Program-made: the position numbers and the translations under genes
Source of the DNA: Caecitellus pseudoparvulus
Taxonomy: Eukaryota > Protista > Bigyra: Bicosoecida
Length of the DNA: 64,000 nt
NCBI GenBank assembly: GCA_965644315.1
Contig: CBFFRQ010000069.1
Coordinates: 620,001 to 684,000, forward strand
Direction: 5' to 3'
The notes under the pieces: generated by a model
What the model saw: only the letters and a program-made list of their open reading frames with translations
What the model was told of the DNA's origin: nothing
Databases searched by the model: none
Shown here: one piece after another, positions 28,056 to 47,642 of the stretch
Layout of the letters: the number at the start of each line of letters is the position of its first letter
Numbering within the stretch: position 1 is the stretch's first letter

Positions 28056-31000
28056 TCAAAGCTGCGAGCCAATACGCTTCAAGCTGCCAGGCCGGACCAG
28101 TCCACTGCCACTGCGCGGGATGCCCATGCCGGCCGTGAAGCTGCCTCGAGCTGAACCAGTGCGAGGCGTGTGGCGTCCCGCTGCCTGAGACATGGATGCG
28201 ACGCGCTGGAAGGAACTGCCTCGGGAGGGCGCCGCTCGCGCCGATGGCTCCCGCAGCGCCTCCTTCATGTCGCGGGAGCCGGCAGAGACGGCTGCCATGG
28301 AGCGATACAGCTCCTGGCCGCACACCATGAAGTGCTTGTTCAAGGCTGCAAGCACATCCGGGGAGGTGGTGTCCGCGAAAGACGCATCTCCTTCGCGCAG
28401 CACGGCCAAGGCGTAGTTCAGGATGCTGTACAGCTGCACCGTGTGGTCCAGCAGCTCAGCTTTCACGTACAGCGTGAGGGGGTCTGTGCCAGCGGAAGGG
28501 TCAATGAAAATGGCGCCCCGGAAGACATGGTCTGCAGGGGCCTTGCGGGGGAATGCCGCCGCCGCCTCCACCTTCACCGTGGGCACGCGCCCACCCCGTG
28601 GGCCCTGCAGTGCAGCGTGCTCGGGGGCCATGCCAACAGCCATGACGATGGCCCTCGCGAAGCGCAGCCTGACGCGGCGGCGATGCGTGAGGCCTTGCTC
28701 TGGAAGCGGCACCAACACATCGCTGGTGCTGCCTGCACCACGACTGGAGGGCAGCGAGGATGGCAGTGCAGAGGCGGCCACAGCCAGCATGCCGCCGTGC
28801 GCGTCTGCGTCCCCGACGTCAGATCGCGCAGACGCCAAGCCTGACGACGCCGATGTGCCTTGCACAGCCGCACTGCGCTGGAGCAAGTCTTGCATGGCGG
28901 CCTCCACAGCTGCGATGCGGGCGCCGATTGATGCCAGGTCCGCACCCTTCTGATTGTAGGCGGCAGCAGCGGCAGCCAGCCCTGCTGGAAGGCTGCTGCC
29001 TGTCTGGCTTTCCTGTGCGCTGTCGGAGTGGGGCGCCTCTCCAGAAGCAGGTGGGCGGTCGACCCGTGACGCCTCCTCGCTGGGGCGGCGAGGCGTCAGG
29101 CGGGCCATGGAGGCCATGGACCGGCGGGCAGCCCGGTTGGCCAGCGCAGACATGGTGCGCTGCATGTTCCCGTGGACAGTGCTGACGACTGACGCGCGCT
29201 GCTGGCGCGCTGACTCCTCGAACGCAGCCCGGTCGCTCTCCATCTGCCGCTGCAGTGCCAGCTGCTTCTTGCGGCGGCGTTTGGCGAGACGGGCCCGCAT
29301 CTGAGAGTCTTGTCGTTCACGCTCGGATGCCAAGGCTGCCTTGCGGCGGGAGGCATCCTGCTTGTACGTCTCCATGATGCGCGCACGCTCTTCTTCTGAC
29401 AGGCCACTGGCTGACGCTTCGGCAGCCGCTGCCCGCGCCTGCTCCTCTGCCAGCTCCTTGGCCTCCTGGATGCCACGCTGGCGCCGCGCCTCGGCCTCTT
29501 GCTCCGCGGCGATCTTGGCCTGCTCCTCCTCCAGGGCACGCATAGCGGCCTGCTGCTCTTGCTCCCACGCTGCCTTGGCGGCCGCCTGCCTGGCCTCCAG
29601 CTCTGCCAGGCGCCGCTCCTTCTCGCGCTCCATCTCGGCCTGGAAGTCTGCCAGTTCAGCGGCCTCAGCGGCCGCGGTCTCCATCTCATGCCGCCGCAAG
29701 ATGTCTTCTGGCGCCAGGGAGGAGAAAGCATCCGACACCTCTGCCAACTGGCGCTGGCGCAACTCGATCACCTGCCGGGCATGCTCAGCCTCCATTTCTC
29801 GCCCCAGCTCGGCACCCTCTGCGGCCGCGCGGCCTTCGAACTCCTGCTGCAGACCCGCGATGAGCTCGTCCACTTCGGCGTCGCTGGCGCCACCTTCCCG
29901 CGCCTCCTCCACTGCCTCCGCGATGATGCCACGCTTTTCTTCGTATAGAGTCTCCAACATCGCCTTGCGGCGGGCTTGGCGCTCAGCATACTGCGCTGCC
30001 AGCAGCTCGGCAGTTTCACGTGCGTGCCGCTCACCCAGCACCGCCTCGATGGCGTCTGCCTTGCGCTCAGGAGGAATGCTGCCGTCCTCCAAGATCTTCT
30101 TCAAGGCGGCCTTCTCTGCATCCTGAGCAGCCATCGCAGCTGCGGATGCCGCCGCGCGCGCATGGGCACCCTCGGCGTCCTTGCGTTCCAACGCCTGCTT
30201 CCTGGCCAGGGCCTTGGCCTTGCGTGCCCGTCTGGCTTCAAGCTTGGCCTCCAGCTTGCGCTGCTGTGCCGCCTTGGAGGCTTCCAACGTCTTGGAGTAC
30301 TCCGCCAGCTCGGCAGCGTGTTCCTCTTTCATGCGAGCGACAGCGGCTTGGTCACCAGAGGCGGCCTGCAGCGCAGCTTGTTGCGCGGCACGCTTGTCAG
30401 CCAGCAGCCGCTCCATTTCCTCAGCTGACTTGCGGGCAGCTTCGATGCGCGCCGCCTGAGCACGCTCTTCCTCTGCTGCCGTCGCCCGAGCCTGCTCTTC
30501 TGCTTGCTCCTTGGCCAGCCGTTCCGCCTCTGCCGCTGCCTCTGCCTTGACCCGCGCCATCTCCGCCTCGCTGCGTGCGCTGGCGCCTACCGACGTGCTG
30601 GCGCTTTGCACCTTTGACAGCAGGTCGGAGGTCCAGGTGGAGGCTTCCGCTGCCTGCGCACCCAGGCGGGCTTCAAGTGCCCCAGCCTGACTAGACCTCT
30701 CTTTGTCGATGGCCTGTCGCTGGGCCTCAGCCTGCACGGTAATGTTGCGCAGCTGGCGGATGCGTTTGTCCCGCAGCCGCGCACGAGCCGCCTCCGCCGC
30801 TTCTTGTGCCTCAGTGCGCACGCCAGCCATGGCTGCCGCGATGTCTGCTTCAGACTGCAGCTTGATGGCTTCGATGTCGTCGTCCAGGGATGCACGCAGC
30901 AGCTTGATCTTGGCTGCCGCTTCGCGGTCAGATGCCGCCAGCTTGGCTGCAAGGATCTCCTGCTCGTGCACCCGCTCAGCCTCCAGCTGCTGTGTAAATG

Positions 31001-34000
31001 CCTGCAGCTCTCGCTCAGCGGCCGCTCGAGCAGCGGACAAGCGCTCAGGGTCTCCACCCGCCGCCTCCACTTCGCCCTGCAGCTTGGCAGTCACCATGGC
31101 AGTCTTGCGATCCGTCTTCTCCCTCAGCTTGTCCTCGATGGCAGCTTCAGCAGCCTCCCGTGCTGCGGCTGCCGCCTGCCGGACGGCGGCGATCTCGCCT
31201 TGCGCCTTGGCCGTCGCAGCGGCAATCTTGGACTCCGTGTTCAGAACTGCACGCATGACGCCGGCGTTGGCCTCGTCAGCTGCCTCTGCCGCCTCGTCTG
31301 CTCGGGCGTCCTCCTCTTGCAGCCCCTGCGCCTCAGCCGCGTGCACGGCCTCAGAGCTTGCGAGGATGCCCTCCGCTCGAGCCACGTCACCATCTGCGGC
31401 TGCCTGGCGTGCAGACTCCTCTGCTTCCGCCCTCTCCCGGGCGTGCTTCTCCGCCAAGGCCTGCGCGCGGCGTTTCTTGCGCTCTGCCAGGCGCTGCCGC
31501 AACCCGGCGCTCTGCTGTGCGCGCGCCTCCGCCAAGCGCTCAGTGACTGCCTGCACGTCACGCTCGTGGGCAGCAAAGAGGGCCTCGCGCTCAGAGCCGA
31601 TGGTCTCTGCGGCCTTCTCCAGACGGGCCTGCAGCGAGGCTTGCTCCTCCTCCTCCTTCTCGGCCAACTCAGCCTCCATGGCTTCGCGCTCCGCAGCGTG
31701 TCCAGCCAGCAGAGACTCGCGCTCGGCAGCTGTCGTCGCGCTCTCCAACTCCTTGGAGTGCTTGGCGTGCATGGCGGAAGTGGCAGCCTCCCGCTCAGCC
31801 TCCAGGCGCTTCCGCAGCCCTGTCAACTCCTCCTCTCGCTCCTTGTCATGCTTCGCTTGCATGGCCTCCAAAGCCGCATGGTGCTGCTCCCGCAAAGCGT
31901 CCATCTGCGCCTCTGCGTCGCGCTGCAGAGACTGCACTTGGGCGTGGGCTGTCTTCAGCGCCTCCTCGCGCTCCTTAGCGGCCTGCAGAGCGGCAGCCTT
32001 GGCTGCAGCGGCCTCGGCCGCTTCAATGCTCTCCTGCTCCCCCGCAACAGCGGCAGCTTGCGCAGCCGCGATGGCTTCCAGCAGCTCCCGCTCCTGACGC
32101 TCAAACTTCGCTGCTTCCGCTGCTTCCAGCGCGGCTGCTTCCTCCTCCACTTCCGCCAACTGCACTGCGTACGCCTCCCGTTCGCTGGCACGCTCAGCGT
32201 CGTGGCTGTCGGCAATGTCTGCTGCCTTGGCTGCCACTGATGCCTCCATCTCGGCCACGACGCCCGCCTCTGCAGCCCGCACCTTCTGCTCAGCGCCCCT
32301 GCGGCGCTCTTCACGAAGCTGAAGCTCGATGTCTGCCTTGGCTTGCTCGGCTTCTTGCTCAAGGGCGGCTGCCATAGCCTCCGCATCGGCTGCTGCAGCT
32401 GCAGACAACTTGGCCTTTGTCGAGTCATCCAGCTGCAGCGCTGAGCTGAGACGCTCCACGTCTTCAGCAGCTTGGGCGGAAATGTCAGCCTTGCGCTCCT
32501 CGGCAGTGGCACCCTGCTCAGACTCCACCTTTGACACCTCTTCCAGCACTGCTGCCTTCTGCTTCTCTGCGTCAGCGTCCATCTGGGCCTCAACGGCAGC
32601 CGAGACAGCCTGGACTGCAGCAGCGTGCGTGGACACGGCACTGCCCGCAGAGTCACTGCGCGCACGCGCATCCGGCTTGGAATCGCCAGCCTCGTCGCCC
32701 GCCTCCTCCTCGTGCGCTGCCTCTTCCTCAGCCTCCAACGTGCCTCGCACAGCAATGGAAGCAGTCAAGGGATCTACAGGCACGCCTCCCTTTTCCTTGA
32801 CCAGGGCGCCCAGGCGGGACATGAGCGCGCTGACCTCGGAAGCGTTGATGCTGGCACCTGAAGCCTTGTTGTCGCGCTCATCGTCGACGCGATCCTTCAC
32901 AGTGTCAAGGTACTGCGCCACTTCGTTGTACACCGCGTCACGAGCAGCGCTCAAGCCGACACGGTGCTCTTCCGCAGAGGCTTTCAAGTTTGGCACCTGG
33001 CTTTGAATGATGGACAGCACCTTCACAAGGTCCCCCACTGCCACCTCCACTCGGCGGCGGGCGTCTGAGGACGCAGTGTTCACAGCCTCCACGTACGCTG
33101 ACTTGGACAACCACTCCTCAGGCCCCACTGCACTTCCCACCATTGGGCCAGACTCCACGTCGTCAAGAAGCGGCAGGCGCCCAGCAGCCACACCACCAGC
33201 AGAGCCTTCCTCGTCACTGTACTCCCCCAGGAGTGGCTCTTCTGAGTCCGCGGAGTACTCGGAGCTCGAGGAGCGCCGGAGGGCACGGCGCTTGCCACTC
33301 TTGCCCCCTTGCATGTCCTGCAAAGCCTCCAGAGACGGAACTCGCGTTGAGTACGCGAGGACACTGCCAGTTTCCACCACGGTTGCGCCAAGCTCCGCAT
33401 GGACGCCAGGGGCCACGGCAGCAAACGACTCCAGTGCCTCCAGCAAGCGGTTCACGGCGGATGTGACCGCGTCTTCTTCAGTCTTGGCATCAGTGAGCAG
33501 GCCTGCCACGCCACCCTCGTGGCGGGCATCGGCAGCGGCATCCTCGTCCACAATGCCCAGATCGCCAGCGGCCTTCCACACAGGCACCGAGCTGCCACGG
33601 CGGGCCTGCTCCTCCGCCAAGAGGCTGGCAGCCTTGTCCATGGCGCCTTGCAGCGCCACCACGCGCTCCCCTATGTCGCCCAACGTGCTCTCAGGCACGA
33701 CATCCACAACTGGCACAAGGGGTGGGCCTTCTGGTCCATGAGGGCCTTCAATGCGGAATACGATCGACTCCTCATCATCTGGGGACACCTCAGCTAGCAC
33801 CTGGGCCGTGCCAGCTCGCAGCTCCTGCGTGGCTCGATCAGCCACCTGCGCCTCCCCCCCACGCAGGGCATCTGTCAGGGCAAACAAATTGGAGATGAGG
33901 TCGGCTTCGACTTCAGCGAGGGACTTGTCTGTCGCGGCACGCTTCGTCAGCTCTGTCAGCACCTCTTCGCCTGCTGCGACCTTCGCCGCGTCTTCTTCGT

Positions 34001-37000
34001 GGGCAGCGCCTGCTCCGCCCATCTTCAGCACGCGCTGCTCGTACGCAGCTCGACGAAGGATGCGCTTGATGCTCTCCGCTTCGTCCCGCAACGTGGACAC
34101 CAACGCCCCCATGGACTCCAACCTGTTGCCAAAGGTGGCAGTGGTGCTGCTCGCGTGCTCCTTCACCCGCTCGAGCACCTCAGACAGCTCCAAGTCATCA
34201 ACATCCCATCCCCCCGCGCTGGAGCCGCCAGACATGAGCGCCGCAACGACTGCGTCGTCCACCTGGCCGACCGCCCGGCCCTCCACGATGTCGGCGATGG
34301 CATCCCGCAGCTCCTCGTCCTCAGCTTCCTCCTCAGAGTCGGCTTCGAACACGGTCTCAAGTGCCCCTGGTCCCAGAGGCTTCACCATGCTGGAGCCCCT
34401 CGCGAAAGAAACCAGGGCAGTGCTGGCCACGTCCTCCTTGGCCTCCGCAGGCTTGGCGCCGCTGTCAGCAACCTGCACAATCTCGGTATTCTGACCCTTC
34501 TGGTGCATGAGGAGAAGGTTGGCGCGTGTGCCCTTACGACGGTACGCCACCCGCCTGCTCGCACGCCCCTTGGCCCACGGGCTGTAGTGGCAGTAGCAGA
34601 AGCCCAGCACGACGAGGCTGACGGACAGGACAAACAGCACGACAGTCCACGCAACAAACACCCAGTCCACGTCCAGAACAAGCTCATCGTTGCGCCGCGC
34701 CCCCACCTCGATGAGGGTTGCGAGGTTCATCGGCACAATGGGCCCATCGGTGGGGCAGCTGCTGCCAGCTGATGCCACCGTGACCAGCATGCTTGCATCG
34801 GGGTTGTTCGACATGGTGAAGGCGTACACACCTGCGTCCCGGAAGGTGAAAGCAAACAGCGTCACATTACCGTACGCGCGCTGAGTGGCAGCCAACTGCT
34901 CAAACTGGCCGTAGTCAAAGTCCGGGTTGGAATTGAGGAGGGAGTCACGCACGTACACCGGAAAGCCACCTCCCTCGCGCAGATCCCACATCAGCGTGTC
35001 ACCCAAGGACAGGCAAACCATGGGCTGCTGAATGCTGGGTGCTTCAGCTTCAATGTCGGCACGGCTGGGGCCCGAGCTGGCCTGCAAGCGTCGTGCTGCA
35101 CCCGTCTGGTGATCCGCCACAAGAATGTGGGCGTGCAGCATGTCGTGGCTCACGTGCACATGCCGCCCCAGCATAGCGCGGGCCTGCTCGTTCACCTCGG
35201 CGCCCCGGCGAATGCCCAAGCTAGCCAGCGCGCCCGACTCTGCTGCTGAGACGCCAAAGAGAGGGGTCAAGAGGCGGCTGCCGGAAGCAGTCGAGTTGTT
35301 GAAGGTGAGGGGGATCGTGACGCCAGACTGCACCGTGCTGCGCACCGGTGCTGGCACGCCGTACTGCCCAAAGAAACCATCGCTGCCTGACACGACAGAG
35401 CGCACGCTGCAGACAGTAGCTGTAGCGCCGTTGCTGCGGGCAGTGGCCAGTGTGTCAGCTGTGATGGCCACTGAGTCCCCCACTGCACCTTCTCCCGACT
35501 GTCCATCCTGCAAGCCAGGCAGACAAGCCACATCACCGGCCAGCAACCCGGGCACTGCGTCCAAAGGAAGCAGCGTCGTGTTGAAGGAGCCGAAAGAGGC
35601 ACTGGTCGTGTCAGTGTCCAGCGTGTCGATGCGGAGCAAGCCGGTGGCAGCATCGATGCTGACGCGGGGCACCTGACTCTGGCACACCGGCCCGCACACC
35701 TCCAGGATGTCTGGCAGCTCGTCACACTCGCAGATTCCGGTGCTAGCATCGTACGTCCCGGAGCCAGAAGGGCAACGGCCGCTGGCGCAGAGGGAGTTGT
35801 CCCCAAGCGGCTTGCACTTGCCTGTTGCGGCATCCCTTGTCTGGGAGCTGTCACAGATCTCGTAAATGATGGGTTCGCAAGCAGCTGAGCCGTCCTGGGT
35901 GCTGATGTCCTTCCCGTCAGCGTCAGTGAATGCGTGGAAGGTATCGCACACACACGTCGCTGTGGCGGCCAAGTAGCGGCGATTGCGCCCAGCACACTGG
36001 CAGTTTGTGGCACCCCGGTTGGAGTCACTAGTGAAGCCACAAGGCCTGCATGCTGTGGCTGCTGCCTCAGGCTGGTACTGGCCAGCTGGGCACGGCTGGC
36101 AGGCTGTAGCGTTCGCGGCGCCTTGGTCAGGGTTGACACTGCCAGGTGGGCAAGGCACCTCCTCTGCTGAGCCCTCTGGGCAGTACCTGCCTTCGCGGCA
36201 AATGTAACCGTTGTGCAGGTCAGGGTCGGTGGGAGTCGCCGTGGGAGTGCCGCCAAGGCATACGAAGCCTGGCGAGCAAGGCGAGCAAGAGGCCTGCCCA
36301 GGCCTATCTGAGTAGGAACCGGCAGGGCACAGCTGGCACGCGACATCGCCTCGCTGGCGCACATCCCGCGACACGTCAGGTAAGCCGTAGAAACCCACGT
36401 TGCACTGGGATGGTGAGATGGAACCTGCTGGGCAGTACAGCGACTTGGGGCACACAACAGGGGTGACGGTCGAGTTCGTAGGGCAGTAATGCCCCGCAGG
36501 GCACACTTGCGGTGCGACAGCTCCAGACCCACAGAACGTCCCGGCGGGGCAGGCAACCGGCTCCACTGTGCCAGCTCCGCACGTGAAGCCGGCGGGGCAG
36601 GTGACAGGTGCCAGCATGCCAGTGTCAGCGCAGACGTGCCCCGCGGGACACGTGTGGCAGTCCGCAACGGAGGCCCCCGCCTCCTCGCCGCGGTAAGTGC
36701 CGGCGGGGCACTGTGCGGGGACAGCACAGCCAGGTCCCGAACAGGAATTCTCGCAGTACGAGCCAGCGGGGCAAGCATGTGGGTCCAGAATGGACAGCGC
36801 AGGCACATTGCAAATGTAGCCGTCTGGGCAGGGCCTGCAGTCTGAAAGGGCATCTGAGCCCGCATCAGGGTTGTATGTACCGGCAGGACATGCGATCATG
36901 TCAGCTCCCAGGGCACAGTAGAACCCTGGCTCACATAGCGTGGCGACATTGCGTTCACAGCGGAAACCAGCGGGGCAGTCTGTGCAATCCGACGGCTCGT

Positions 37001-40000
37001 CGCTGCCAGCCACGCTCACGGTGTCGTTTGCGCAGATGGTGGGAATGGCTGACCCTGCAGGGCAGTAGAAGCCGCCAGGGCACAGCTCGCCGGTCACACT
37101 TGCCGCGCCAGAGGTGCAGAAGTAGCCAGCAGCGCATGGAAGGAGGGCACCGCCCACACATGCCAGGCCTGGAGGGCAGGCTGTGCACTGGCCAGCCGTC
37201 GCAAGGCCAGTGTTGTTGCTGTACGTGCCGTCCGGGCAGGTAACCTCGTCCGCGGAGGCGCCCGCACAGTACCCGCCAGCATCGCACACCGCTGGGTCCA
37301 CAGTGCCGACAGAGCACTCGAAGCCGAAGGGGCACGCGTCGCAGGCAGTGGCATTGTATCCACGCCCATACCTGCCGGCAGCACATGGGGCTGGCGACGT
37401 GGCACCAGCGGCGCAAACTGTCCCCGGTCCACACGGGTTCCCGGCAGAGTAAGTCAAGGAGGGCTGAGGCGTGCCCGAACCCGCGCCACACTGAAAGCCG
37501 GGCAGGCACTGGCCACCTGAAGTGCCATCCACGGGGGTTGCAGTTGTGGCGTTTCTGAGACAGAAGTGCCCTGCAGCACACGGCCCAGCGGGGGTCGTGC
37601 GGCCTGTCGTGTCACAGTACTGCCCTTGCCCACACTGCTCGCACTGGCTGGTGTTGGTCAGACCCACGCGGGAGCTGAAGGTGCCCAGCGGGCAAGAGAG
37701 GTCAGCGCCGCTGCTCTGGGCTGGCCCACACACGCGTCCCGCCGGGCAGTCCTGTGGCTCTGTGAGGCCTGTGGAAGGGCAGAAGTTACCTTCCAAGCAG
37801 GGAGTGCACGTGGGCTCCGACTGGTTGTGGCTCTTCTCAAAGCTGCCCACTGGGCAGGGAGTGGGTGCTGACGAGCCCTCAGGACAGTACGATCCAGCAG
37901 TGCAGTTCAACGAGGGTGTGATTGTGCCAGGCTCGCAGTAAAACCCAGCGGGGCATGCAAACTCAGCAGTCACATTCGTCATGCCTGCGAGCGGGCAGAA
38001 CGCCCCGGCGGGGCAAAGCAAGCAATCAGTTGAAGCCTGCAAGCCAGTTGTCGTGGGCGCAGTGTAACGGCCCGGGGGGCACAGCTGCGGCGCTGGTGTG
38101 CCCGCTGGGCAGTACGCGCCAGCAGGGCAGACGTTGCCCGTGACGCCGTCCGTGGGCATGGCGGACACGGCAGACGCATTGCAGTAGAAACCAGCTGCGC
38201 ATGTGCCGTCGGGCGCTGTGGCCCCTGTGGAGGCACAGAATGACCCAGCAGGACAGTCAGTACACTCGTCAGCTGTAGCCAGCCCTGTCGAATTGCCGAT
38301 GGTGCCGGCTGGGCATGGCTGCAGGGTCCCAGAGCTCTGGCCGGGGCCGCAAAAGTACCCGGCTGGGCACTGCACCGGCTCTTCCAGGCCACTGGCGGAG
38401 AACGGGCAGTAGTGGCGGTCTGGACACCCGACACACGAGGCTGCACCCTTCACAGGGCCGTACGTCCCTGCCGCGCAAGGGCTCGGCGACGGCACCCCAG
38501 CACCGCAGAAGTGGCCAGCGGGACACGTTTCGTTGGGGTAAATGGTTCCCTGCGGGCAAAAGAAGCCAGCTAAGCAAGGAAGCAAGGCGGGATCCGTTGC
38601 CGCTGCGTTGGGACAGTACACGCCGGCAGGGCAGGGTGTGCAGTCGTCCACAGAGTCCATGCCAGTGTCGTTGCGGTGGGTGCCAGGCGGGCACGCGACG
38701 GGTGATGAGATGCCAGACGGGCAATAGTAGCCACGAGGGCAAATGGAGCCCGTGTGGGTCCCATTCTGGGACTGCCCAGGCTGTGATGAGGCGCACGTGT
38801 ACCCAGGCGGGCAATCGCTGTCTGTGGGGTCGCTCTGGCTGGCAGCGCCGATGCAGAAATGCCCCCCGTCACAAACTGGTCCAGGAGCAGTCATGGCAGC
38901 TGCGCTGCAGTACTTGCCAGGCGGGCAGGCTTCACACTGCGCTGCCTGCCACGCTCCAGCGATGTCGCTGAATGTTCCTGCAGGACAGGGGTTGGCGATT
39001 GCCGATGTGGAGCCTGCAGGGCACCAGTACCCCGCAGAGCACTGTACGGGGTCCACTGTACCTGCCCCACAGGCGAAGCCTGGTGGGCACTGCTTGCAGG
39101 TGGCTTGCCCCGTTTCATTCTGGAACAATCCAGGGGAGCAAGCGGTGGGAGTGGAGGCGCCCTCGGGGCAAAAGTGACCACTCCAGCAGAGGAGCAGAGG
39201 GGACGTCGTGCCAAGGGGACAGTAGAAGCCTTCAGGGCAGGACAGCGTGGCCAGCACAGTCCCAGTCCTGGGACAGTACATGCCTGCGGGGCACGCTTCG
39301 CAGTCGTCCACCGAGTCTTGGGCAGTGGCGTTGTTGTACGTGCCGTTGGGGCACACCTGCGGACGCGTGCTGCCCGAGGGGCAGAAGTGCCCTGCAGGGC
39401 AAACGTCTCCAATTACACCCACACCAAAGCGCTGCTCTTCGCCCGCGGGCGTGGCGGTCCATGAACCACTCTGGCAGTAGTAGCCGCCAGCACAGGGCCC
39501 GTCAGGGGACGAGCTGGTGCGTTGAGCACCAGGGCAAAACGCCCCCGCCGTGCATGGGACGGGGGAAACACTACCCTCTGGGCAGTACTCGCCGGGGACA
39601 CACGGGCCCCCCGTGCCGTCGCTGGCATCCGCCACTGTAGATGAGCCATTGCAGTAAAAGCCTGCGCTGCAGGCTCCAGTGGGAACGACGTTGCCAGTCC
39701 CAGCGCAAAAACTGCCTGCGGGGCACGGACTGCAGTCGTCCAGTGCAGTACCGCCGGTGGCGTTCCGGTACGTCCCAGCAGGGCAAGGTGACCCTGTACC
39801 AGACGTGGAACCCGCGGGGCAGAAGTGGCCAGCTGGGCACACACCTGACTCGGCTGTCCCCGTGAAGGCGGTGCTGTTGCCGGTGCAAAAGAAGCCTTCG
39901 GGGCAAACTGTGCACGGGGTGGTGGTTCCAGGCTGAGCAGAGTACCGACCTGCAGCACACCCAGTCGGCGAAATCGAGCCTGCGGGACACCACGTGCCAG

Positions 40001-43000
40001 GTGGGCAGATGTCACCCCCGACATCACCATGCGGTGGCACATCCTCGACTCCCGTTGAAGGGCGGGACGACTGGACTCCCTGGACACAGTAGAAGCCCGC
40101 GTCGCAAGGCCCTTCTGGCAGCGGCAAGCCGGCCACGCTGCAGAACTGCCCCGCATCGCAGAGCTGGCAGTCTGCTTCGCTCTGAGCCGCAGTGCCATTC
40201 AAGTAGGTGCCGGGTGGGCAAAGGGTTGGGAATGCGGAGCCAAGCGGGCAGAAGGAGCCCTCGGGGCACGGCAGGTTTGTCGTGTTTGACGCGCCATCGC
40301 CTCCCCGACTGCTAATCGCACCGCCTAGGCAGTAGTACCCAGCGTCACAGTCCCCTGACGGCATCTGCAGATCGGAACTGGCGCAGTACTTGCCAGCATC
40401 GCAAGGCAGGCAATCCGTCTCATCCACAGTGCCAGTTAGGGGCTGGTAGGTGCCTGCAGGGCAGCTCACAGCACCAGTCATGCCGGTGACGTTGCAGTAC
40501 CCCCCTGCTGGACACGGCGTTGGGATCTCTGTGCCGGTGCCACTGCAAATCGTGCCAATGGGGCACGGGTCGCATTGCACTCTGCCTGTTGTGTTTGCGT
40601 AGCGCCCTGCAGGGCAGGCCGTCGGAGAGGAGGAGTTGGTGGGGCAGCTTGACCCTGCCGGACACACGCCGCCCAGAGCGGGAACTGCTCCACTGGGCGT
40701 GGAGCTCTCCGTGCTTCCGGCACAGAAGAAGCCCTCGCGGCATTCCTGGGGGAGGATGCTGCCAGTGGGGCACGCAAAGCCCGGTGGGCAGGCTGTGCAC
40801 GCGGTGGGGGAGCCGGCCAAGGTGCCGGGCTGATAGCGCCCGGCAGGGCATGGGTCACCCACAACGGACCCTGCTTCGCAGTACTGGCCGGGTGGGCACT
40901 CCAACCCTGCCGGGTTGCGCACTTCTTGACCAGGTGGACAGTAGTACCCCGCATCGCAAGGGCCAGAGGGCGCCGTCAGCCCGTTCGTGCCACAGTATGA
41001 CCCTGCCCTGCAGAGAAGACACTCCTCCTCTGAGCGCACGCCTTGCTCTGCGGAGTACCGCCCTAGGGGGCACAGAGTGTCCGTCTCATTGCCCGGGGGG
41101 CAGAAGCTGCCAGCGGGGCACACCGTGGGCTCAGTCATGCCGAGCACGGGGCAGAAGAAGCCGGCAGGGCAGGGCTGGCACACGGCTTGCTTGCGCAGGG
41201 GGTTATAGGTGCCTGGTAGGCACTGCAGCGGGGCAGACGAGCCTTCGGGCGCATACGTGCCTGCCGGGGCCTCGAATTGGAACGGGTTCTCGGCGCCACC
41301 AGTGCAGAAGTACCCCGCAGAGCAGTTGCCAGTGGGTGCAGGCAAAGTGCTGCCAGAGCAGTAGGTGCCTGCGTCACACTGCTGGCAGTCGTCGCTGGAC
41401 GCCTGACCCTGACTTTGGAGGTAAGTGCCCTTGGGGCACGGCTGTGGATCCCAGCTCCCCGCGGGGCAGTAGGAGCCTGCTGGGCAGATGCCACCATACG
41501 AGCCCTCGCCCACGCCGGCTGTCAAGCCGCCTTTGTCCCAGTCAACAGGCTCAGACAGCTCCGGCTGCGCAGTTGCGCTGCCCTGCACGCAGAAGAAGCC
41601 AGGGTCGCACAGGCCCCGCGGGGCGGACATGCCGACTTCATCACAATAGTAGCCAGGCAGGCACAAGCGGCAGTGCCCCTCAGAGGAAAGGCCAGTGCCG
41701 TTGCCGAAACGGCCTTTGGGGCAGGGAACGGGGTACTCGGTGCTGGCGGGGCAGTACGATCCAGGCGGGCACAGCTCAGGCAAGGCAGCGCCCTCCACGC
41801 AGAATCCGCCTTCAGGGCAGGCCAGGCAGTCTCCTTGGCTGGCAGCACCAGTTGTGTCCCGGTACGAGCCCCCTGCGCAGTGCACTTGCGTCGGGGAAGT
41901 GGAGCCGATGGGGCAGTAGTACCCCCAACCGCAAGGGCCAGAAGGGTTGATGGAGCCCTCCAGGCAGTAGCTGCCGGCCGGGCAGGGGTCGCAAGTTCCA
42001 TGCCCAGGGGCGTCCGCGAATGTACCTGGGGGGCAGGGAACGGGGTACGGCTCCCGACTGCCAACGCCATCTTCACCTCCGCCCTCTGGGCACTGAAAGC
42101 CCACGGGGCAGTCATCCGCTGGCGACACGGGCACGTGGTCCATGCCCGTGGGGCAGAAGGCGCCCGCTGCACATCGCCGGTTTGTGCGCATGTCGGTCCA
42201 CGACACAGACACCGCATCGCAATGGTGCCCGAACAGGCAGGGGCTGCAGGTTGCCTCGCCGTCGTCGGAATACCGACCCAGCCCACACGGCACTGGGTCG
42301 GATGTGCCGGGCGGGCACTCGAACCCACCCGGACAAACTGGGCATTCAGCTGGGTGGCTGCCGCCGGTGCGCTGGGGCGCCTGTGCGCCCACAGCGCTGG
42401 AGTATGAACCCCCTTCGCAGGGCACCGGATACACCGTGCCTTCAAGGCAGTAATGTCCCACTGGGCACAAGTCACAGTCTGTGCTGGCTTGGGCGTTCAG
42501 GGCGATGCGGTACCTTCCTGCCGGGCATGGGAACTCAGTGCTAGCAGTGGTGCCAGCGGGGCAATAGTGCCCTGCAGGACAGTCGTCGGTAACGGTGTCC
42601 TCACCACCCTCGCAATAGAAGCCAGCGTCACACTCAGTGCACTGCAGGGCGCTTTCGGCGGAGGTGGTGGGTGTGTACCGCCCCTTGGGGCAGGCAAACT
42701 CCCGCTGGCGCTGCGTGCCGGCGGGGCAGTAGTGCCCCTTAGCGCAGGGAATTGGCTGCTCAGACGCCACGCCTGTCCTGCGGGGGCAAGCGAAGCCTGC
42801 CGGGCACTGGAGGCAGTCGTCTTCGCTGGTGGCGTTGACATAGGGCATGTACGTGCCGGCCGGGCACTGGTACTCAGTGCAGATGGCCGTGCCAGAAGGG
42901 CAGTAGAAGCCCTTGCAGCAGTCCCGGTTGCTTGCTGACAGACCACTGCCATCACAGACTCGCCCCGCCTCGCAGGGCAGGCAGCCATCTGCAAAGCCGA

Positions 43001-46000
43001 CGTTGACTGTCGGGTTGTACGTCCCTGACCGGCAGGGGATGGGTGAGTTGGAGGCGTCCGGGCAGTAGTGGCCCAGCGGGCACGTCACGCAGTCGCCCGG
43101 CGCAGTCAGGCCGGTGTTGTTGGAGTACGTGCCAGCTGCACATGGGTACTGTGTGTCGATGCCTGTGCCTGCTTCACAGAAGAAGCCCTCCTCACAGGGC
43201 ACTGGTGCCACGGCACCCTCCATGCAGTAGGAGCCCGCTGGACACTCGATGCACGCCGTGAGCAAGCTCTGCCCCGTCGCGCCATTGTACCTGCCGACAG
43301 GACAAGGGTACTCTGTGCGGAAGGCGGTGCCTGTGGGGCAAATGTGCCCCGCGGGGCAGGTGTCGCGGTACTCATCTGTCGCTGCAGAGGAGGCGTACTG
43401 CTCGCAGTACTCTCCGGCTGGGCAGATCGTGCAGGCTGCCTGGAAACTGCCGGCGCAGGTGGCTCCAGAGGCATGGTAGCCTGCTGGGCACGGCGTCAGC
43501 AGCTGCCCCAGCGTGGGGGGCAGCGCATCCTCATACGGATTGAACCAAAAGCCTTCTGGGACGTTGCACGCTCCAGCGTCGTTGTCCGCTGTGGTGGCCC
43601 CCGCGCCACATAGAACACCCGGGTCGCAGTACTGACACTGCACAGCTGTTGCAGAGCTGGCAAAGGTCCCGATGGGGCACTGGATGGGAGCCAAGGTTCC
43701 TTCATCCGGACAGTAGTTCCCTGCACCGCAATCTGTGCAGGTCGTCTGAGATGCGGGGGAGTACCGGCCGGGGGGACACACCTCTGGGTCTCGCCCGACA
43801 TTGGGGCAGGCATATCCTGCAGGGCAGGGCACGCACACAGCGTGGTGCTGGTTTGGGTCGGCTGAGGCCACCAGCTCGACGAGCCAATCCGTGCGAAAGG
43901 TGCCCGCCGTGCAAGCGGTGGTGGTCACGCCTGTCCCGGCGCCATTCACCGCACATGAGCTGCCGAAGGGGCATGTGCGGCAGGCTGCGTCTCCCCTGAA
44001 AGAGTACTGGTTGTTCGAAGGCAAGCAGTAGCCAGCTGGACGCGCGGCGCCCTCGTCAGGGCAAAACTGACCTGACGGACACTGCGAGCACAGGGCCGAG
44101 CCTGCAGGGGAGTAGGACCCAGCTGGACACTTGACGTTGCCTGAGATGCTGCTCTGGGAAGGGCAGGTGTACCCTGCGGGGCACTGCTGGCACACCGTGG
44201 CCCGCTCCAGGGCGTACGTGCCACCAGGACATGCCACAGGGCTGCCCCTGGGGTCTGGACAGTAGCTGCCCGCTGGGCAATCCACGCACGCGTCCAAGCC
44301 TGCGTTCACCGTGGTGCCTAGTGGGCAAGGGATGGGGGCGTCCAAGGCAGGGTAAGGGCAGATGTGCCCCGCCGGGCAGACGATGCAGGAAGTCATGCCA
44401 GGCCGGGAGTACTCGCCCGTCCCACAGGCCACGGGCGCCACAGCTGGGTCAGCGCATGAGGAGCCCGCTGGGCACTCCGTGCAGGTGGTGGCTGTCGCAG
44501 CGGAGTAGCTGCCAGCCGTGCAGCGCTCAGGGGGCGCTGACGTGGAGGGGCAAGCCGAGCCAGCCGGGCAGTCTGTGCAAGTGGTGGCAGCCTGCACTGC
44601 AGCATACCGGCCAGCAGTGCAGGCAGTCGCTTGCACTGGCCCGCTGGTGCTGCCACACTCAAACCCGACAGGGCACGCGACGCACTCGCCGCCGCTGGCA
44701 GACACGAAGTAGCCCGTGGGGCACGGCACAGGCTCTGTGCTGGGGTCCTGGCACGCATTGTCAGTGGGGCACACGGCACATGCGGTGCGGGAGGCAGTGG
44801 CGATGGACGGCGAACTGTACCTGCCTGGGGGGCACTCTGTCGGCAGCTCTGCAGCACTCGGGCATGCGTAGCCGTTGGGACACACCAAGCACACAGTGTA
44901 GCCTGCTGGGGAGTAACGCCCAGCAGCGCAGGCCACTGGTGCGACGGCCGGGTCCGTGCAGGCAGACCCCGCGGGGCACTCTGTGCAGCTGGTTGCCTGG
45001 GCAGCGTCTTGGTACGTGCCCACGGGGCATGGCTGAGGCAGCTCTGCGGGGGAGGGGCAGAAGAACCCCGCCCCACAGTCGTCACACCCCTGGCCGTCCC
45101 TGCCAGTCTGCGACGTAGTGCCCGCCGGGCAGGCCACCGGCTCCACAGCAGGGTCTGTGCAGTCGAAGCCGGGAGGGCACTCCACGCACAAGTCGCCGCC
45201 TGCTGCCGCCCAAGTGCCCGCGTCACACGCAGCGCAAGCGGCCTCCCCGCCCACCGACGTCTGGCCGGCGGGACAAGGGGTGGGCGCCGCACTTGCAGAG
45301 GCGCACGCGTGCCCTGCAGGGCACAGGGTGCAGCTGGCCGAGCCAGCGGTGTCGGCGTACGTGCCTGCTGCACAGGCGGTGCAGCCCTCCTCGCCATCGA
45401 CTGAAAAGGTGCCCGCAGCACAGGCCACAGGCGTCACTGCCTGGTCAGAGCAGTCGTAGCCTGCTGGGCACGGCTCGCAAGCTTCAGACCCAGCTTTGTC
45501 AGTGTACGTGCCTTCAGCGCAGGCGATGCAGGAGGCTTGGCCGGTAGGGGAGTATGTGCCTGCAGTGCACGGGGTGGGAGCAGCAGTACTGCTCGCACAA
45601 CTGTGCCCGGCAGGACACGGCACACAGAAGCCAGCGTTGCCCTGCTGGTACCTCCCAGTGGGGCAGTCTTCATCCACTGCAAAGGGCGCGGGGCACGCCT
45701 CACCACTTGGACAAGCAGTGCACGACGTCCTACCTGTGTCGCCTTCGGTGTATCTCCCTGCAGGGCACCTTGTAGGGGCAGTGTTGGCCGTACCGGGGCA
45801 GAGGAAGCCTTCCGGACACTCGATGCAGGCAGCCATGCCAGTGTAGGGCCCATACTCTCCAGCGACGCAGTCTGTGCAGTCCGCCACGCCCGCCCCCGAG
45901 GCTGTGCCAGCGGCACACAGTGTTGGCGTGGCACTGGCCGTGGAGCAGTCCATGCCAGCGGGACACTCTGTGCAGGCTGCGGCACCTGTACTGTCCGAGT

Positions 46001-47268
46001 ATCGGCCGGAGGCACAGGCGGCACAGTCTCCAGGCGCGTCCCCCCCGGTGGAAGGGTTCGCCGTGCCCGCCGAGCAAGGAGTCGGGAGGACTGTGCAGTC
46101 ACCGCCCAAGCAGTAGTGCCCTGCAGGGCAGGGGATGCACACCCCGCCAGACGTGCCGTCGGTCGCATTGCCTGCATAGGTACCTGCAGCGCAGGTAACC
46201 GTGCTGCTGCAAGCGGCTGTCGCGTCATTGTCGAAGATCTGCACGGTGATGATGTTGGACGGACGGGCTGGGACGCCATTGTACCCGCCGTCGGCCGAGG
46301 TGACGGCGTGTGTGAGCGTGCGGGAAAACACGCCCTCCACGCCATTGTCCACACCGTCGTCTGTGATGGTTACCGTCACGGTTTGGGGCGTGTTCCAGTT
46401 GCCAGTCGTGAAGGTGAGGGAGCCAGGTGCAGCAGCCAGCGTGCCGTCTTGTGGCGTGACGCTGACATCCACATCTGCAGTGGGAAGCGTGCCCAGCACG
46501 ACATTGTAAGTCACAGCTGACCCGCCCTCTGCGGCGATGAGGCTGCCGTTGGACAGCTCGACTGTGAATGGAACGAAGGTGGGCAGCAGTCAGGAGCGGC
46601 GTTTCGCGTTCGTCGCTGAGCGACCAAGGCATCCGAAAAGCAGCTCCGGCAGCACACCGAGGCACATGGCGAGCAGCGTTTAAGTCGCTCGCACAATGTC
46701 TATGTGCAGACATTGATGTAGGCCCACTCCTTGCACCCTGCTCAGCTTGCTCGACACACGTGAAGCGAGTGACGGCAGCAGGCGAGGCGAGGCGAAGTGC
46801 CCAGCTCAGGCCTTGGCAAAGAACCCCTGCATGCGTGCGGGGGCATCCACTCACCAATGGAGTCACGGCAGCTGCCCGAGACGAACAGGTCATGGGGAGC
46901 CAAGCAGACGCAGTCGGTTCGGCCGCCGTTGGACTGGGCATCTGTTGGGCACGCCAGGCAGTCTGCAGGGTCGTCGCCAATCCCCGCCTTGTACCTGTGC
47001 TCACAGCCAGGCGCAGAGGTGCAGTTGGTCCGTGAAGGCAGGGGGGCGCGGCAAGTGCCTGCACGTACGTGTACTGAGGGCACGCTGTGCAGGCGGAGGA
47101 GTCGTCCAGGTATAGCCCGGCGGCACACTGGGCAGCGGCAAACCCCGCACTGCCCAGGACAAGCAGTGCGGCCCTGCACAAGGATGGGGGCGAGGAGGGG
47201 GTGCAACGCGGGTGCAAGGGCTTGTTCATACACGTGTTCTTCCATCCGCACCATAAAACCGAGCGCAT
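28056..47268 (-). CDS. Giant type-I membrane protein: signal peptide, Calx-beta/cadherin-like domain, ~3500 aa of ephrin-receptor-like (GCC2/GCC3-type) Cys-rich repeats, single TM, ~2200-aa largely coiled-coil cytoplasmic tail; ~6255 aa
   Basis: Exons 47268-47252, 47173-47069, 46994-46855 and 46561-28056. Introns are 47251-47174, 47068-46995 and 46854-46562, all GT..CAG with compatible phases. The spliced N-terminus MRSVLWAALLVLGSAGFAAA-QC is a clear signal peptide. TYNVVL..PTADVDV..LTFTTGNWNTPQTVTV is a beta-sandwich pattern. CPAG.YC..G...P..C..G.Y recurs over ~46215-35690. TM segment WVFVAWTVVLFVLSVSLVVLGFCYC lies at ~34590-34665, followed by a basic stop-transfer stretch and an E/A/R/K/Q-rich helical tail. 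Confidence 0.88.
35690..46215 (-). repeat. Coding tandem array of Cys-rich (ephrin_rec_like / TNFR-like) repeats
   Basis: Many dozens of diverged CPxGxYC/CxxCPxG units over ~10.5 kb. On the plus strand they appear as recurring gggca / cagta / gcagaa motifs. Confidence 0.9.
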
Positions 47269-47642
47269 GGTCGGCCAGGGAGGCAGCTCAATACGTAACG
47301 GCGTGCTGCCGAGCCTGGCAGCTCAGGCTGGAGCCGTCGACTGCGAGACCTCCTGACACTGGGAGGGAGGTTGACTTTGCTAGAAGGAGGGCTGCATACA
47401 AGTCGCACGAGGAGGCAACGTCATGTAGCTCTCGGAATGGTTGGTTTCGTGCTGCAAATTTTGATTCTGGGCCAGCTGTGCTCCTGCTCGAAGAAGTGCA
47501 GCGTGTGTGATCACCGATGCACACACATGGCGCGTCTTGAACAAATGACAACACAACCCCATGCTGCAGTGATCCCCATGTGGCGCACGTTTCTAAATGG
47601 GACCTCTGCGGTACAGCCGCGCAGGCGAGCAAGTCAGGGGCC
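47269..47642. promoter_or_regulatory. Putative bidirectional promoter between the giant Cys-rich gene and the LRR-like ORF
   Basis: 374-nt spacer between divergent starts, containing the AT-rich island AAATTTTGA at 47456-47464. Confidence 0.4.

What the first reader, a model, noticed from the sequence alone, without database searches (positions are those of the whole stretch)
28056..47268. 6,250-aa receptor-like protein: very long Cys-repeat stalk outside, ~2,200-aa coiled-coil tail inside, no enzymatic output domain
Seen: signal peptide (only after splicing three 5' introns), one beta-sandwich, ~3500 aa of Cys-rich repeats, a globular juxtamembrane domain, one TM and a very long helical tail. 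Known: ephrin_rec_like/GCC2-GCC3 repeats occur in apicomplexan and ciliate CRMPs (exocytosis triggering), but those are multi-pass. Related Cys-rich repeats occur in the Chlamydomonas mastigoneme protein MST1. Inference: this is a long extracellular tether or contact sensor mechanically coupled to a cytoskeletal or ciliary scaffold, for example in prey capture, adhesion or extrusome triggering. I recall similar uncharacterised giants in other flagellated eukaryotes, but I cannot verify that here.
Basis: partly seen in the sequence, partly recalled or inferred. Interest (0 to 1): 0.8.

Follow-up and report, generated by a model that had tools for sequence, protein, structure and literature searches.

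The report
Giant single-pass surface tether protein
This is a real 6,255-residue gene for a cell-surface protein of a marine flagellate, with a very long cysteine-rich rod outside, one membrane span and a 2,177-residue helical tail inside. It belongs to an unstudied family of such giants found across very distant eukaryotes.

Summary
One minus-strand reading frame (28056-46514) runs 6,152 codons without a stop. Three short 5' introns add a start codon and a signal peptide, giving 6,255 residues. An RNA contig shows intron 1 directly.

The parts in order:
- a weak Calx-beta-like sandwich;
- about 3,500 residues of Ephrin_rec_like cysteine repeats (396 Cys);
- a conserved membrane-proximal cassette;
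- one membrane span;
- a cysteine-free, charged, alanine-rich tail with no Pfam domain.

New here:
- The genome has five paralogs with this architecture.
- A profile of the juxtamembrane domain finds 933 cluster representatives. Named ones come from oomycetes, a thraustochytrid, Incisomonas, Vitrella, Bodo, Diplonema, Kipferlia, Barthelona, Fabomonas and Chromosphaera, and none is characterised.
- The juxtamembrane domain models as a cupredoxin-like sandwich without copper ligands.
- A dibasic-Leu motif just before it is conserved across the family, which suggests a processing site.
- The tail carries one conserved, roughly 390-residue five-helix module.
- The tail shows no canonical heptad pattern, so "coiled coil" is not shown.

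It is not a CRMP, because those are multi-pass. The function (a transmembrane tether or contact sensor) is still inference. The scan had already noted one paralog elsewhere in this genome.

The parts
47252..47268 (-). Exon 1: start codon and first 17 nt (MRSVL, first two bases of W)
   Evidence: gene model. An RNA contig covers 47251-47450 and joins to 47172.
47174..47251 (-). Intron 1, 78 nt, GT..AG
   Evidence: Joint 47172->47251 in metatranscriptome run X1, with ends CT..AC on the + strand, cut +1. Sequence read.
47069..47173 (-). Exon 2: rest of the signal peptide (cleavage about AAQ|C) and the first CxxC module
46995..47068 (-). Intron 2, 74 nt, GTACGT..CACAG (inferred, no RNA evidence)
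   Evidence: Frame continuity and splice consensus.
46855..46994 (-). Exon 3: second Cys-rich module
46562..46854 (-). Intron 3, 293 nt, GTGAGT..CACAG
   Evidence: X1 contig ends its match at 46562 with a 10-letter loose end. Its last 7 letters equal the end of exon 3.
28056..46561 (-). Exon 4: 18.5-kb intron-free exon, including the stop codon at 28056-28058
   Evidence: ORF of 6,152 codons. Collinear ortholog P0002.
46224..46475 (-). N-terminal beta-sandwich, Calx-beta-like (below the Pfam cut-off)
   Evidence: PF03160 at E 0.0032, 17.9 bits against a cut-off of 27. The same domain repeats 2-5 times in some family members.
35715..46172 (-). About 3,500 aa of Cys-rich Ephrin_rec_like/CxxC repeats. 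Cys spacing is 13-3-6-10 at first, then 17-3-6-(10-12)-6-(10-12).
   Evidence: PF07699 at E 1.8e-39, 4.6e-8 and 1.5e-11 in three thirds. Cys spacing.
35091..35687 (-). Pre-juxtamembrane cassette (ORF aa 3610-3808), conserved family-wide, ending in GF.G.Y..P and a linker
   Evidence: Alignments A1 and A5. No strain differences in aa 3601-3824.
35082..35099 (-). AARRLQ: dibasic-Leu motif, candidate processing site, 16 aa before the juxtamembrane domain
   Evidence: [RK]R.{0,1}L occurs within 35 aa upstream of the domain in 44 of 73 family members, against 0-5 of 73 in control windows. The Arg column is at least 90% conserved in A5.
34680..35042 (-). Juxtamembrane domain (ORF aa 3825-3945): cupredoxin-like beta-sandwich without copper ligands
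   Evidence: Profile search found 933 representatives. AF2 core pLDDT 85-92. Plastocyanin Z 7.0 and pseudoazurin Z 6.7, with nine of the ten top rows cupredoxin-type copper proteins or domains. Foldseek lists amicyanin and plastocyanin.
34590..34661 (-). Single transmembrane helix (ORF aa 3952-3975), followed by a basic stretch
   Evidence: Hydropathy scan finds only one segment. Modelled as a helix. Sequence.
32715..34589 (-). Proximal tail (ORF aa 3976-4600): acidic, 25-29% hydrophobic, conserved only among near relatives
30312..32714 (-). Ala/Glu/Arg/Lys-rich tail region (ORF aa 4601-5401), no Cys, no canonical heptads
   Evidence: Ala 23-35%, charged residues 31-39%. Best-register a/d score 2.8 of 8.
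29136..30311 (-). Tail module C (ORF aa 5402-5793): family-wide conserved five-helix module with a near-invariant RH..E, flanked by basic RL..RR..K motifs
   Evidence: One dominant copy per protein in 97 of about 157 sequences; reversed-sequence control gave 0 hits. A4 alignment. AF2 pLDDT 89.7. No Pfam family. No specific PDB fold.
28059..29135 (-). C-terminal region (ORF aa 5794-6152) with a hydrophobic, probably globular stretch at about aa 5940-6075; conserved only in near relatives
   Evidence: No Pfam or Atlas lead.

Best explanation
The gene encodes a 638-kDa type I membrane glycoprotein and is one of five paralogs in this genome. It belongs to an old, undescribed eukaryotic family.

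Shown:
- A signal peptide sends about 4,030 residues outside the cell. Most of this is a disulfide-laddered stack of Ephrin_rec_like/CxxC modules.
- A conserved membrane-proximal cassette follows: a pre-domain, a dibasic-Leu motif, a copper-less cupredoxin-like sandwich and one membrane span.
- The 2,177-residue cytoplasmic tail is cysteine-free, charged and alanine-rich. Near its end it carries one conserved module of about 390 residues, modelled as five long helices.

Inferred:
- The ectodomain is a stiff filament about 0.2 micrometre long that contacts other surfaces (substrate, prey, other cells or the cell's own coat).
- It is probably cut at the dibasic site during secretion, as Notch, dystroglycan and other large adhesion receptors are, so that pulling could separate or strain the two pieces.
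- The long tail acts as a spacer or scaffold, and its conserved module docks onto a cortical or cytoskeletal partner.
- Taken together, it is a mechanical transmembrane tether or contact sensor without enzymatic output.
For: - Gene and topology.
- Purifying selection and collinear ortholog.
- Five paralogs with the same plan.
- Family of 933 representatives sharing a Cys-rich (~10%) ectodomain, juxtamembrane domain, one span and a charged tail of 1,500-4,000 aa.
- Deep taxonomic spread. The tree groups the window paralogs with stramenopiles and Bodo with Diplonema, so inheritance looks at least partly vertical.
- Juxtamembrane fold.
- Dibasic motif enrichment. Lys is 0.5% and Arg 2.7% of the ectodomain, so the motif is not a composition effect.
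- Tail module.
- No catalytic Pfam family anywhere.
- Disulfide-ladder spacing of about 11 Angstrom in related modules of MST1: PMC10602792.
Against: - There are no localisation, partner or phenotype data for any family member.
- Cleavage is untested, and no P-domain (kexin/furin-type) convertase was found in the genome. Only eight subtilase hits were found.
- In this protein the family-aligned motif column reads SRL. The true dibasic RRLQ lies after a lineage-specific insert of about 70 aa.
- A test of whether the two would-be cleavage products bind gave no answer.
- The tail may fold back on itself as hairpins rather than extend as a spacer.
- Continuity of the transcript across the membrane span rests on the open frame and on conservation, not on reads.
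Confidence: 0.5

Rival explanations
1. Notch-like signalling receptor. The ectodomain is cut at the dibasic site and shed under load or on ligand binding. The membrane stub is then cleaved within the membrane, and the tail, which carries several KRRRKK-type basic clusters, is released to act in the nucleus or cytoplasm.
For: - A conserved dibasic motif lies just outside a small conserved juxtamembrane domain.
- Basic clusters such as RLAERKKRR, KLEARRARK and RLAKRRRKK recur in the tail and in all five paralogs.
Against: - A 231-kDa acidic helical tail (pI 5.05) is an unlikely nuclear effector.
- No DNA-binding or other signalling domain was found.
- The basic motifs sit at conserved positions flanking the helical module and may be structural.
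- Nothing here tests intramembrane cleavage.
Confidence: 0.1
2. Anchor or structural subunit of a flagellar or cell-surface appendage (hairs, scales, glycocalyx filaments). The rod forms or holds the appendage, and the tail fixes it to the axoneme or cortex.
For: - Related Cys-rich modules build the Chlamydomonas mastigoneme filament (PMC10602792).
- To my knowledge, every named organism with a family member has a flagellate stage.
- Weak fold rows for the tail module include ciliary long-helix proteins.
Against: - Only about 17 of the 933 representatives could be named, so co-occurrence with cilia is not established.
- The family occurs in lineages with very different surface appendages.
- The ciliary fold rows are at chance level for long helices (E of 1 or more; Z below 13).
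Confidence: 0.2
3. Cell-cell recognition or adhesion molecule used in mating, aggregation or prey and host contact. Paralogs would provide different specificities, and the tail would serve only as an inert anchor.
For: - Each genome holds several diverged paralogs. There are five here, and the ectodomains are 33-48% identical.
- Ectodomain strain differences run at 0.83 per 100 aa, against none in the juxtamembrane domain or module C.
Against: - The tail is as long and as conserved as the ectodomain and has a family-wide module. This argues against an inert anchor.
- No ligand-binding head domain was recognised beyond a weak Calx-beta-like fold.
Confidence: 0.15
4. Artefact: a chance open frame in GC-rich DNA, or two adjacent genes (a secreted Cys-rich protein and a cytoplasmic helical protein) read as one.
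For: - The DNA is 65% GC, so it is poor in stop codons.
- Public databases hold 2,600-2,900-aa calls that start just before the juxtamembrane domain.
Against: - There are 6,152 codons without a stop.
- The same continuous plan occurs in four paralogs (5,417-6,346 codons) and in proteins of 5,000-7,800 aa from unrelated eukaryotes, including transcriptome-derived ones (Fabomonas, Incisomonas).
- Strain differences are biased to the third codon position.
- The short calls still begin outside the membrane, upstream of the juxtamembrane domain, so they are truncations and not a separate tail gene.
Confidence: 0.03

Closest known systems
Apicomplexan and ciliate CRMPs (cysteine repeat modular proteins; TgCRMPa/b, TtCRMP1/2)
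   Same: Very large surface proteins of protists with EGFR/ephrin-receptor-type Cys-rich repeats. CRMPs are proposed to be contact sensors.
   Different: - CRMPs are multi-pass, with 5 predicted spans in Tetrahymena and 9 in Toxoplasma and Plasmodium. They also carry Kringle, MAR or GAIN-like parts (PMC9670195).
- This protein has one span and none of those domains.
- It has a 2,177-aa tail that CRMPs lack.
Chlamydomonas mastigoneme protein MST1
   Same: Tandem Cys-rich modules like the ephrin-receptor Cys-rich domain, forming a disulfide ladder with about 11 Angstrom spacing in a stiff extracellular filament (PMC10602792).
   Different: - According to that paper, MST1 has nine Ig-like and six Sushi domains plus a polyproline helix, and it polymerises.
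- No anchor or tail of its own is described there.
- No sequence comparison was made here.
Metazoan giant linker proteins usherin (USH2A) and ADGRV1 (from my own knowledge, not tested)
   Same: Proteins of 5,000-6,300 aa that form long extracellular fibres between membranes at cilia and stereocilia. They contain Cys-rich laminin-EGF or Calx-beta repeats and have no enzymatic output.
   Different: - Different repeat types.
- Short cytoplasmic tails with PDZ-binding ends. The SQL end of this protein is not conserved.
- ADGRV1 is a 7-TM protein.
Cupredoxins (plastocyanin, amicyanin, pseudoazurin)
   Same: Best structural neighbours of the juxtamembrane domain: Z 7.0 over 79 aligned residues (rmsd 2.9) and Z 6.7 over 84 aligned residues (rmsd 3.4). 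Foldseek TM by target is 0.5-0.6.
   Different: - No His, Cys-loop or Met ligand set is conserved. The invariant residues are C10, P28, Y30, N37, F42, D43, F47, F67, G71 and C96.
- There is no Pfam Copper-bind match.
- The Z score lies within the range that unrelated sandwiches reach.
Receptors processed by furin-type cleavage (Notch S1, dystroglycan, Fat cadherins) (from my own knowledge)
   Same: A basic motif sits in a linker just outside a small membrane-proximal domain of a very large ectodomain.
   Different: - Cleavage is not shown here.
- No P-domain convertase was detected in this genome.
- There is no sequence relationship.
Giardia VSP and high-cysteine membrane proteins (from my own knowledge)
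   Same: Type I proteins whose ectodomain consists of CxxC-rich repeats.
   Different: Those proteins are far smaller and have a five-residue tail. They have no juxtamembrane domain of this kind. Not compared by sequence.

Membership tests
Ephrin_rec_like (PF07699) repeat proteins | Pfam PF07699 matches above the gathering score | tested here: met
   133.7, 33.2 and 44.3 bits against a cut-off of 23.1 in the three thirds of the ectodomain.
CRMP (cysteine repeat modular proteins) | Several C-terminal membrane spans (5 to 9) | tested here: not met
   One hydrophobic segment in 6,152 aa, and one in each paralog. CRMP span numbers from PMC9670195.
CRMP (cysteine repeat modular proteins) | Kringle, MAR or GAIN-like accessory domains | tested here: not met
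   No such Pfam family at E up to 0.01 over the whole protein.
Type 1 copper proteins (cupredoxins) | Cupredoxin Greek-key sandwich fold | tested here: inconclusive
   Nine of the ten best VIA rows are cupredoxin-type copper proteins or domains (Z 5.0-7.0). Foldseek E is 6e-3 to 5e-2. The scores are middling.
Type 1 copper proteins (cupredoxins) | Conserved His / Cys / His / Met copper ligands | tested here: not met
   There is no conserved His or Met among the invariant or near-invariant columns of 54 sequences. No Copper-bind Pfam match.
Calx-beta domain (PF03160) | Pfam score above the gathering cut-off | tested here: not met
   17.9 bits against a cut-off of 27, E 0.0032. This is a resemblance only.
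Canonical long coiled-coil proteins | Heptad periodicity with hydrophobic a/d positions | tested here: not met
   - No significant 3.5-residue periodicity: 14 of 15 windows of up to 150 aa have z between -1.1 and 1.7. One window inside tail module C reaches 2.6, and all windows of the Ala/Glu-rich stretch are at most 0.5.
- Mean best-register occupancy is 2.8 of 8 in the Ala/Glu-rich stretch, and no window there reaches 6.
- This is a home-made test, not COILS or MARCOIL.
The undescribed giant family defined here (Cys-rich rod, juxtamembrane domain, one span, long charged tail) | Juxtamembrane domain directly followed by the only membrane span | tested here: met
   Profiles A2 and A3: 260 bits for this protein. 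The same arrangement is seen in all hits inspected.
The undescribed giant family defined here | Single copy of tail module C with RH..E near the C-terminus | tested here: met
   287.5 bits at aa 5402-5793 against 7 bits for the next-best stretch. H96 and E99 are at least 90% conserved.
The undescribed giant family defined here | Dibasic-Leu motif 6-19 aa before the juxtamembrane domain | tested here: met
   AARRLQ at ORF aa 3806-3811. Present in 44 of 73 members.
Substrates of kexin/furin-type convertases | Actual cleavage at the basic site by a P-domain convertase | not testable with these tools
   The motif is conserved. PF01483 finds nothing in the genome, and eight PF00082 subtilase hits exist.
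MST1-type mastigoneme proteins | Nine Ig-like and six Sushi domains, a polyproline-II tail, and a filament-forming secreted protein | not tested
   The features come from PMC10602792. No MST1 sequence was available to compare. No Ig or Sushi Pfam match here.

The most novel reading that the evidence does not exclude
This is a member of an undescribed family of giant transmembrane linkers that dates back to the last eukaryotic common ancestor. The family is defined by three conserved elements with no Pfam model: a processed membrane-proximal cassette with a copper-less cupredoxin-like domain, a single span, and a tail ending in a five-helix docking module. It would be a basic piece of protist cell-surface mechanics, coupling a roughly 0.2-micrometre extracellular filament to the cortex or flagellar apparatus, that animals, fungi and plants may have lost.
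Probability: 0.4. Interest if true: 0.8.

Novelty: new variant of a known kind. Interest (0 to 1): 0.65.

Why it matters
Giant surface proteins are among the least understood genes of free-living protists. This one anchors a family that is easy to recognise once its two unannotated modules are used as probes. The family spans stramenopiles, alveolates, euglenozoans, metamonads, ancyromonads and an animal relative. All of its members are currently labelled hypothetical or carry misleading automatic names, such as "SVEP1", "cytadherence high molecular weight protein 2" and "FAZ protein 1".

The two profiles (A3 for the juxtamembrane domain and A4 for the tail module) would allow three things:
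- correct annotation of the family;
- phylogenetic profiling against cilia, phagotrophy or sex;
- the choice of tractable species, such as Phytophthora or Diplonema, for knock-outs.

The conserved dibasic site gives a simple biochemical prediction to test.

Tried and rejected
- **Pfam at E up to 10:** nothing for the juxtamembrane region, four tail pieces or 35 copies of module C.
- **PDB sequence search with the juxtamembrane profile:** only chance rows.
- **ESM Atlas feature search of the C-terminal 253 aa:** scores of 0.76 or less, no lead.
- **First word-based protein search (region 3560-4010):** only the protein itself and one ortholog, probably because Cys-repeat words swamped it.
- **Narrower word-based searches from P0086 and the Bodo protein:** these added taxa, but no characterised homolog and no trypanosomatid. 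This is a weak test.
- **The look-up of encoding contigs:** For two shorter members it gave no organism names.
- **Complex prediction, pre-juxtamembrane cassette against juxtamembrane domain:** no answer, score 0.00. This counts neither for nor against binding.
- **Fold searches of tail module C:** only generic long-helix hairpins (flounder antifreeze Z 11.8, PLC-beta C-terminal domain about Z 9, BAR domains about Z 8). All are below the level that means anything for helical models.
- **C-terminal S-Q-L as a PDZ-binding motif:** rejected, because it is not conserved in the ortholog or the paralogs.
- **Canonical coiled coil:** rejected on periodicity tests.
- **CRMP membership:** rejected on the number of membrane spans.
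- **Literature searches for a description of the family:** nothing found.
- **P-domain convertase in the genome:** none found.

Full report
**What is in the sequence**

The window is 64 kb of about 65% GC eukaryotic DNA. It is contig C69:620001-684000 of a 30.6-Mb assembly. On the minus strand an open frame runs from 46514 to 28056, 6,152 codons without a stop.

Composition splits the frame into three parts:
- Residues 1-3600 are 10-12% Cys.
- Residues 3600-3950 have few Cys.
- Residues from 3976 on hold a single Cys and are rich in Ala, Glu, Arg and Lys.

A hydropathy scan finds only one membrane-span candidate, ORF aa 3952-3975. A basic stretch (RRVAYRRKGTR) follows it.

**The 5' end**

Upstream of the big frame, two other frames carry a Met at 47268, a hydrophobic stretch and further CxxC modules. 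Three GT..AG introns of 78, 74 and 293 nt join them in frame. The result is 6,255 aa (638 kDa), beginning MRSVLWAALLVLGSAGFAAAQ|C, which is a typical signal peptide.

I laid contigs of three public runs on 41901-47800 (5,900 letters, within the operators' limit). Contigs of a marine metatranscriptome (X1) cover much of the stretch.
- One contig carries a 78-nt joint with GT..AG ends on the minus strand, exactly intron 1.
- Another contig stops matching at 46562, the first base of the big exon. It continues with letters whose last seven equal the end of exon 3.
- Intron 2 has no RNA support.

The spliced protein was computed only in a local script, to check frame and length.

**Is it one real gene?**

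- An ortholog from another assembly (P0002, 6,231 aa) is collinear and 42-74% identical in every 300-aa tile, tail included.
- A near-identical strain copy (P0001) has the same length and 45 differences. None lies in aa 3601-3975 or in tail module C.
- Of 39 listed nucleotide differences inside the exon, 31 are at codon position 3 (p = 4e-9).
- I did not lay reads across the membrane span. Continuity there rests on the open frame and on conservation of the same plan elsewhere.

**Paralogs and family**

A six-frame search of the genome finds exactly five copies of the membrane-proximal domain. Each lies inside an open frame of 5,417-6,346 codons. All five have the same plan and one span each.

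A profile of the juxtamembrane domain plus span (A2) was searched against 1.84 billion cluster representatives. It found 933 proteins at E of 0.001 or better and 202 at 1e-30 or better. Among the 150 listed:
- The ectodomain is about 10% Cys.
- The domain is followed at once by the only span.
- The tail is 1,500-4,000 aa long with 30-43% charged residues and almost no Cys.

Named members come from the following:
- Phytophthora (three species)
- Achlya
- Hondaea
- Incisomonas
- Vitrella (two proteins)
- Bodo saltans (7,807 aa)
- Diplonema
- Kipferlia
- Barthelona
- Fabomonas (7,499 aa)
- Chromosphaera (7,076 aa)

All are "hypothetical" or carry automatic names. A tree of the juxtamembrane domain plus tail module (98 rows) places the window's paralogs in a well-supported clade with the stramenopiles. 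Elsewhere Bodo groups with Diplonema, the two Vitrella proteins pair, and the oomycetes cluster. This fits old, mostly vertical inheritance with lineage-specific duplications. It also suggests that the window's organism is a stramenopile flagellate.

**The ectodomain**

Pfam recognises only Ephrin_rec_like (E 1.8e-39 in the first third) and a sub-threshold Calx-beta-like sandwich at the N-terminus.

The 396 Cys follow two spacing rules. The first is 13-3-6-10, up to about residue 1100. The second is 17-3-6-(10-12)-6-(10-12). There are 37 N-glycosylation sequons.

The MST1 paper reports that related modules form a disulfide ladder with about 11 Angstrom spacing (PMC10602792). If the roughly 190 disulfides here stack in the same way, the rod would be about 0.2 micrometre long. 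That figure is an extrapolation.

**The membrane-proximal cassette**

Alignment of 41 family members shows a conserved pre-domain (CIC.PGY.FY, DCQPIVY.RC, C.(L/V)HS(I/V), GF.G.Y..P). A short Ser/Thr-rich linker follows, holding RRL or RRRL, and then the juxtamembrane domain.

The pattern [RK]R.{0,1}L lies 6-19 aa before the domain in 44 of 73 members. In six control windows further upstream it occurs in 0-5 of 73. Lys and Arg are rare in the ectodomain.

Four caveats apply:
- This protein and its nearest relatives have an insert of about 70 aa, and the real dibasic (AARRLQ) comes after it.
- No P-domain convertase was found in the genome; only subtilases were.
- Cleavage itself is untested.
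- A test of whether the two would-be products bind gave no answer.

The juxtamembrane domain, modelled with 54 sequences, is a seven-strand sandwich with one helix (core pLDDT 85-92), followed by the membrane helix. Two independent structure searches rank cupredoxin-type copper proteins first: plastocyanin Z 7.0 and pseudoazurin Z 6.7, with nine of the ten best rows of that type, and amicyanin and plastocyanin in Foldseek. The scores are middling, and no copper ligands are conserved. It is best described as a cupredoxin-like fold used as a structural or binding domain.

**The tail**

No Pfam family matches any part of it. The stretch aa 4600-5776 is 23-35% Ala and 31-43% charged, with only 13-22% bulky hydrophobic residues.

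It shows no significant 3.5-residue periodicity. On average only 2.8 of 8 a/d positions are filled, and no window reaches 6. I therefore do not call it a coiled coil.

One part is conserved across the whole family: aa 5402-5793, which I call module C.
- An iterated local profile finds one dominant full-length copy near the C-terminus in 97 of about 157 sequences.
- Reversed sequences give no hit.
- Second-best stretches score about ten times lower or less.
- AlphaFold2 models it with pLDDT 89.7 as five long helices joined by tight turns.
- Fold searches return only generic antiparallel helix hairpins.
- Paralog P3, which has a short tail, lacks the module.

**What it most likely is and does**

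Shown: a giant type I surface protein of an old, widespread and undescribed family. It has conserved extracellular and cytoplasmic modules on either side of a single span and no recognisable catalytic domain.

Inferred: a stiff extracellular filament, probably processed near the membrane, is tied through the span to a long helical scaffold. The conserved end module of that scaffold docks on a cortical or cytoskeletal partner. This would make the protein a mechanical tether or contact sensor.

Three rivals remain open: a Notch-like releasable tail, an anchor for flagellar or surface appendages, and a recognition or adhesion molecule. An artefact or a two-gene reading is very unlikely.

**Comparison and novelty**

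- It shares its repeat type with CRMPs, MST1, SVEP1 and the like.
- It fails the defining CRMP feature, which is several membrane spans (PMC9670195).
- Five literature searches found no description of the family.
- I rate it a new variant of a known kind, namely giant single-pass adhesion or tether proteins.
- There is a fair chance that it is an undescribed family dating back to the last eukaryotic common ancestor.

Noticed in passing
G000 C69:1115765-1134802 (+), C66:533989-550239 (+), C69:806077-824532 (+), C66:144050-162514 (-); loci L006-L017: Four paralogs of 6,346, 5,417, 6,152 and 6,155 codons share the same plan. The 5,417-codon one (P3) has a Cys-poor first 500 aa, a short tail and no module C.
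   Followed up: partly
Proteins P0003 and P0006 (public databases): Public collections hold this genome's paralogs P2 and P5 only as truncated calls of 2,627 and 2,871 aa that start just before the juxtamembrane domain. Family sizes and lengths in databases are therefore understated.
   Followed up: partly
window 41901-47800: Run X3 (2025, organism A) carries a 19.9-kb contig that differs from the window at 139 positions in 5,900, so a second strain or close species has been sequenced. RNA contig X1 reaches 47450, so the 5' UTR is at least 182 nt long.
   Followed up: partly
window 35100-35400 (ORF aa ~3705-3805): This protein and its nearest relatives (P0002, P0004) have an insert of about 70 aa between the family's R(R)L column (here GSRLL) and a second RRLQ site. 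P0004 has RRLQ at both sites.
   Followed up: partly
Juxtamembrane model mee70d9dd8d6d (window 34530-35042): The nearest ESM Atlas structure cluster (TM 0.62 over 120 residues) is an unnamed 187-aa eukaryotic protein family recorded mostly from Chordata. It may be a short animal relative of the juxtamembrane domain plus span.
   Followed up: no
window 29260-31525: Basic clusters of the form (R/K)L..R(R/K).(R/K)(R/K) recur one to four times in the tails of all five paralogs and of the ortholog. Two of them flank module C at conserved positions.
   Followed up: partly
That would leave about 320 nt between it and the stop codon of this gene.
   Followed up: no
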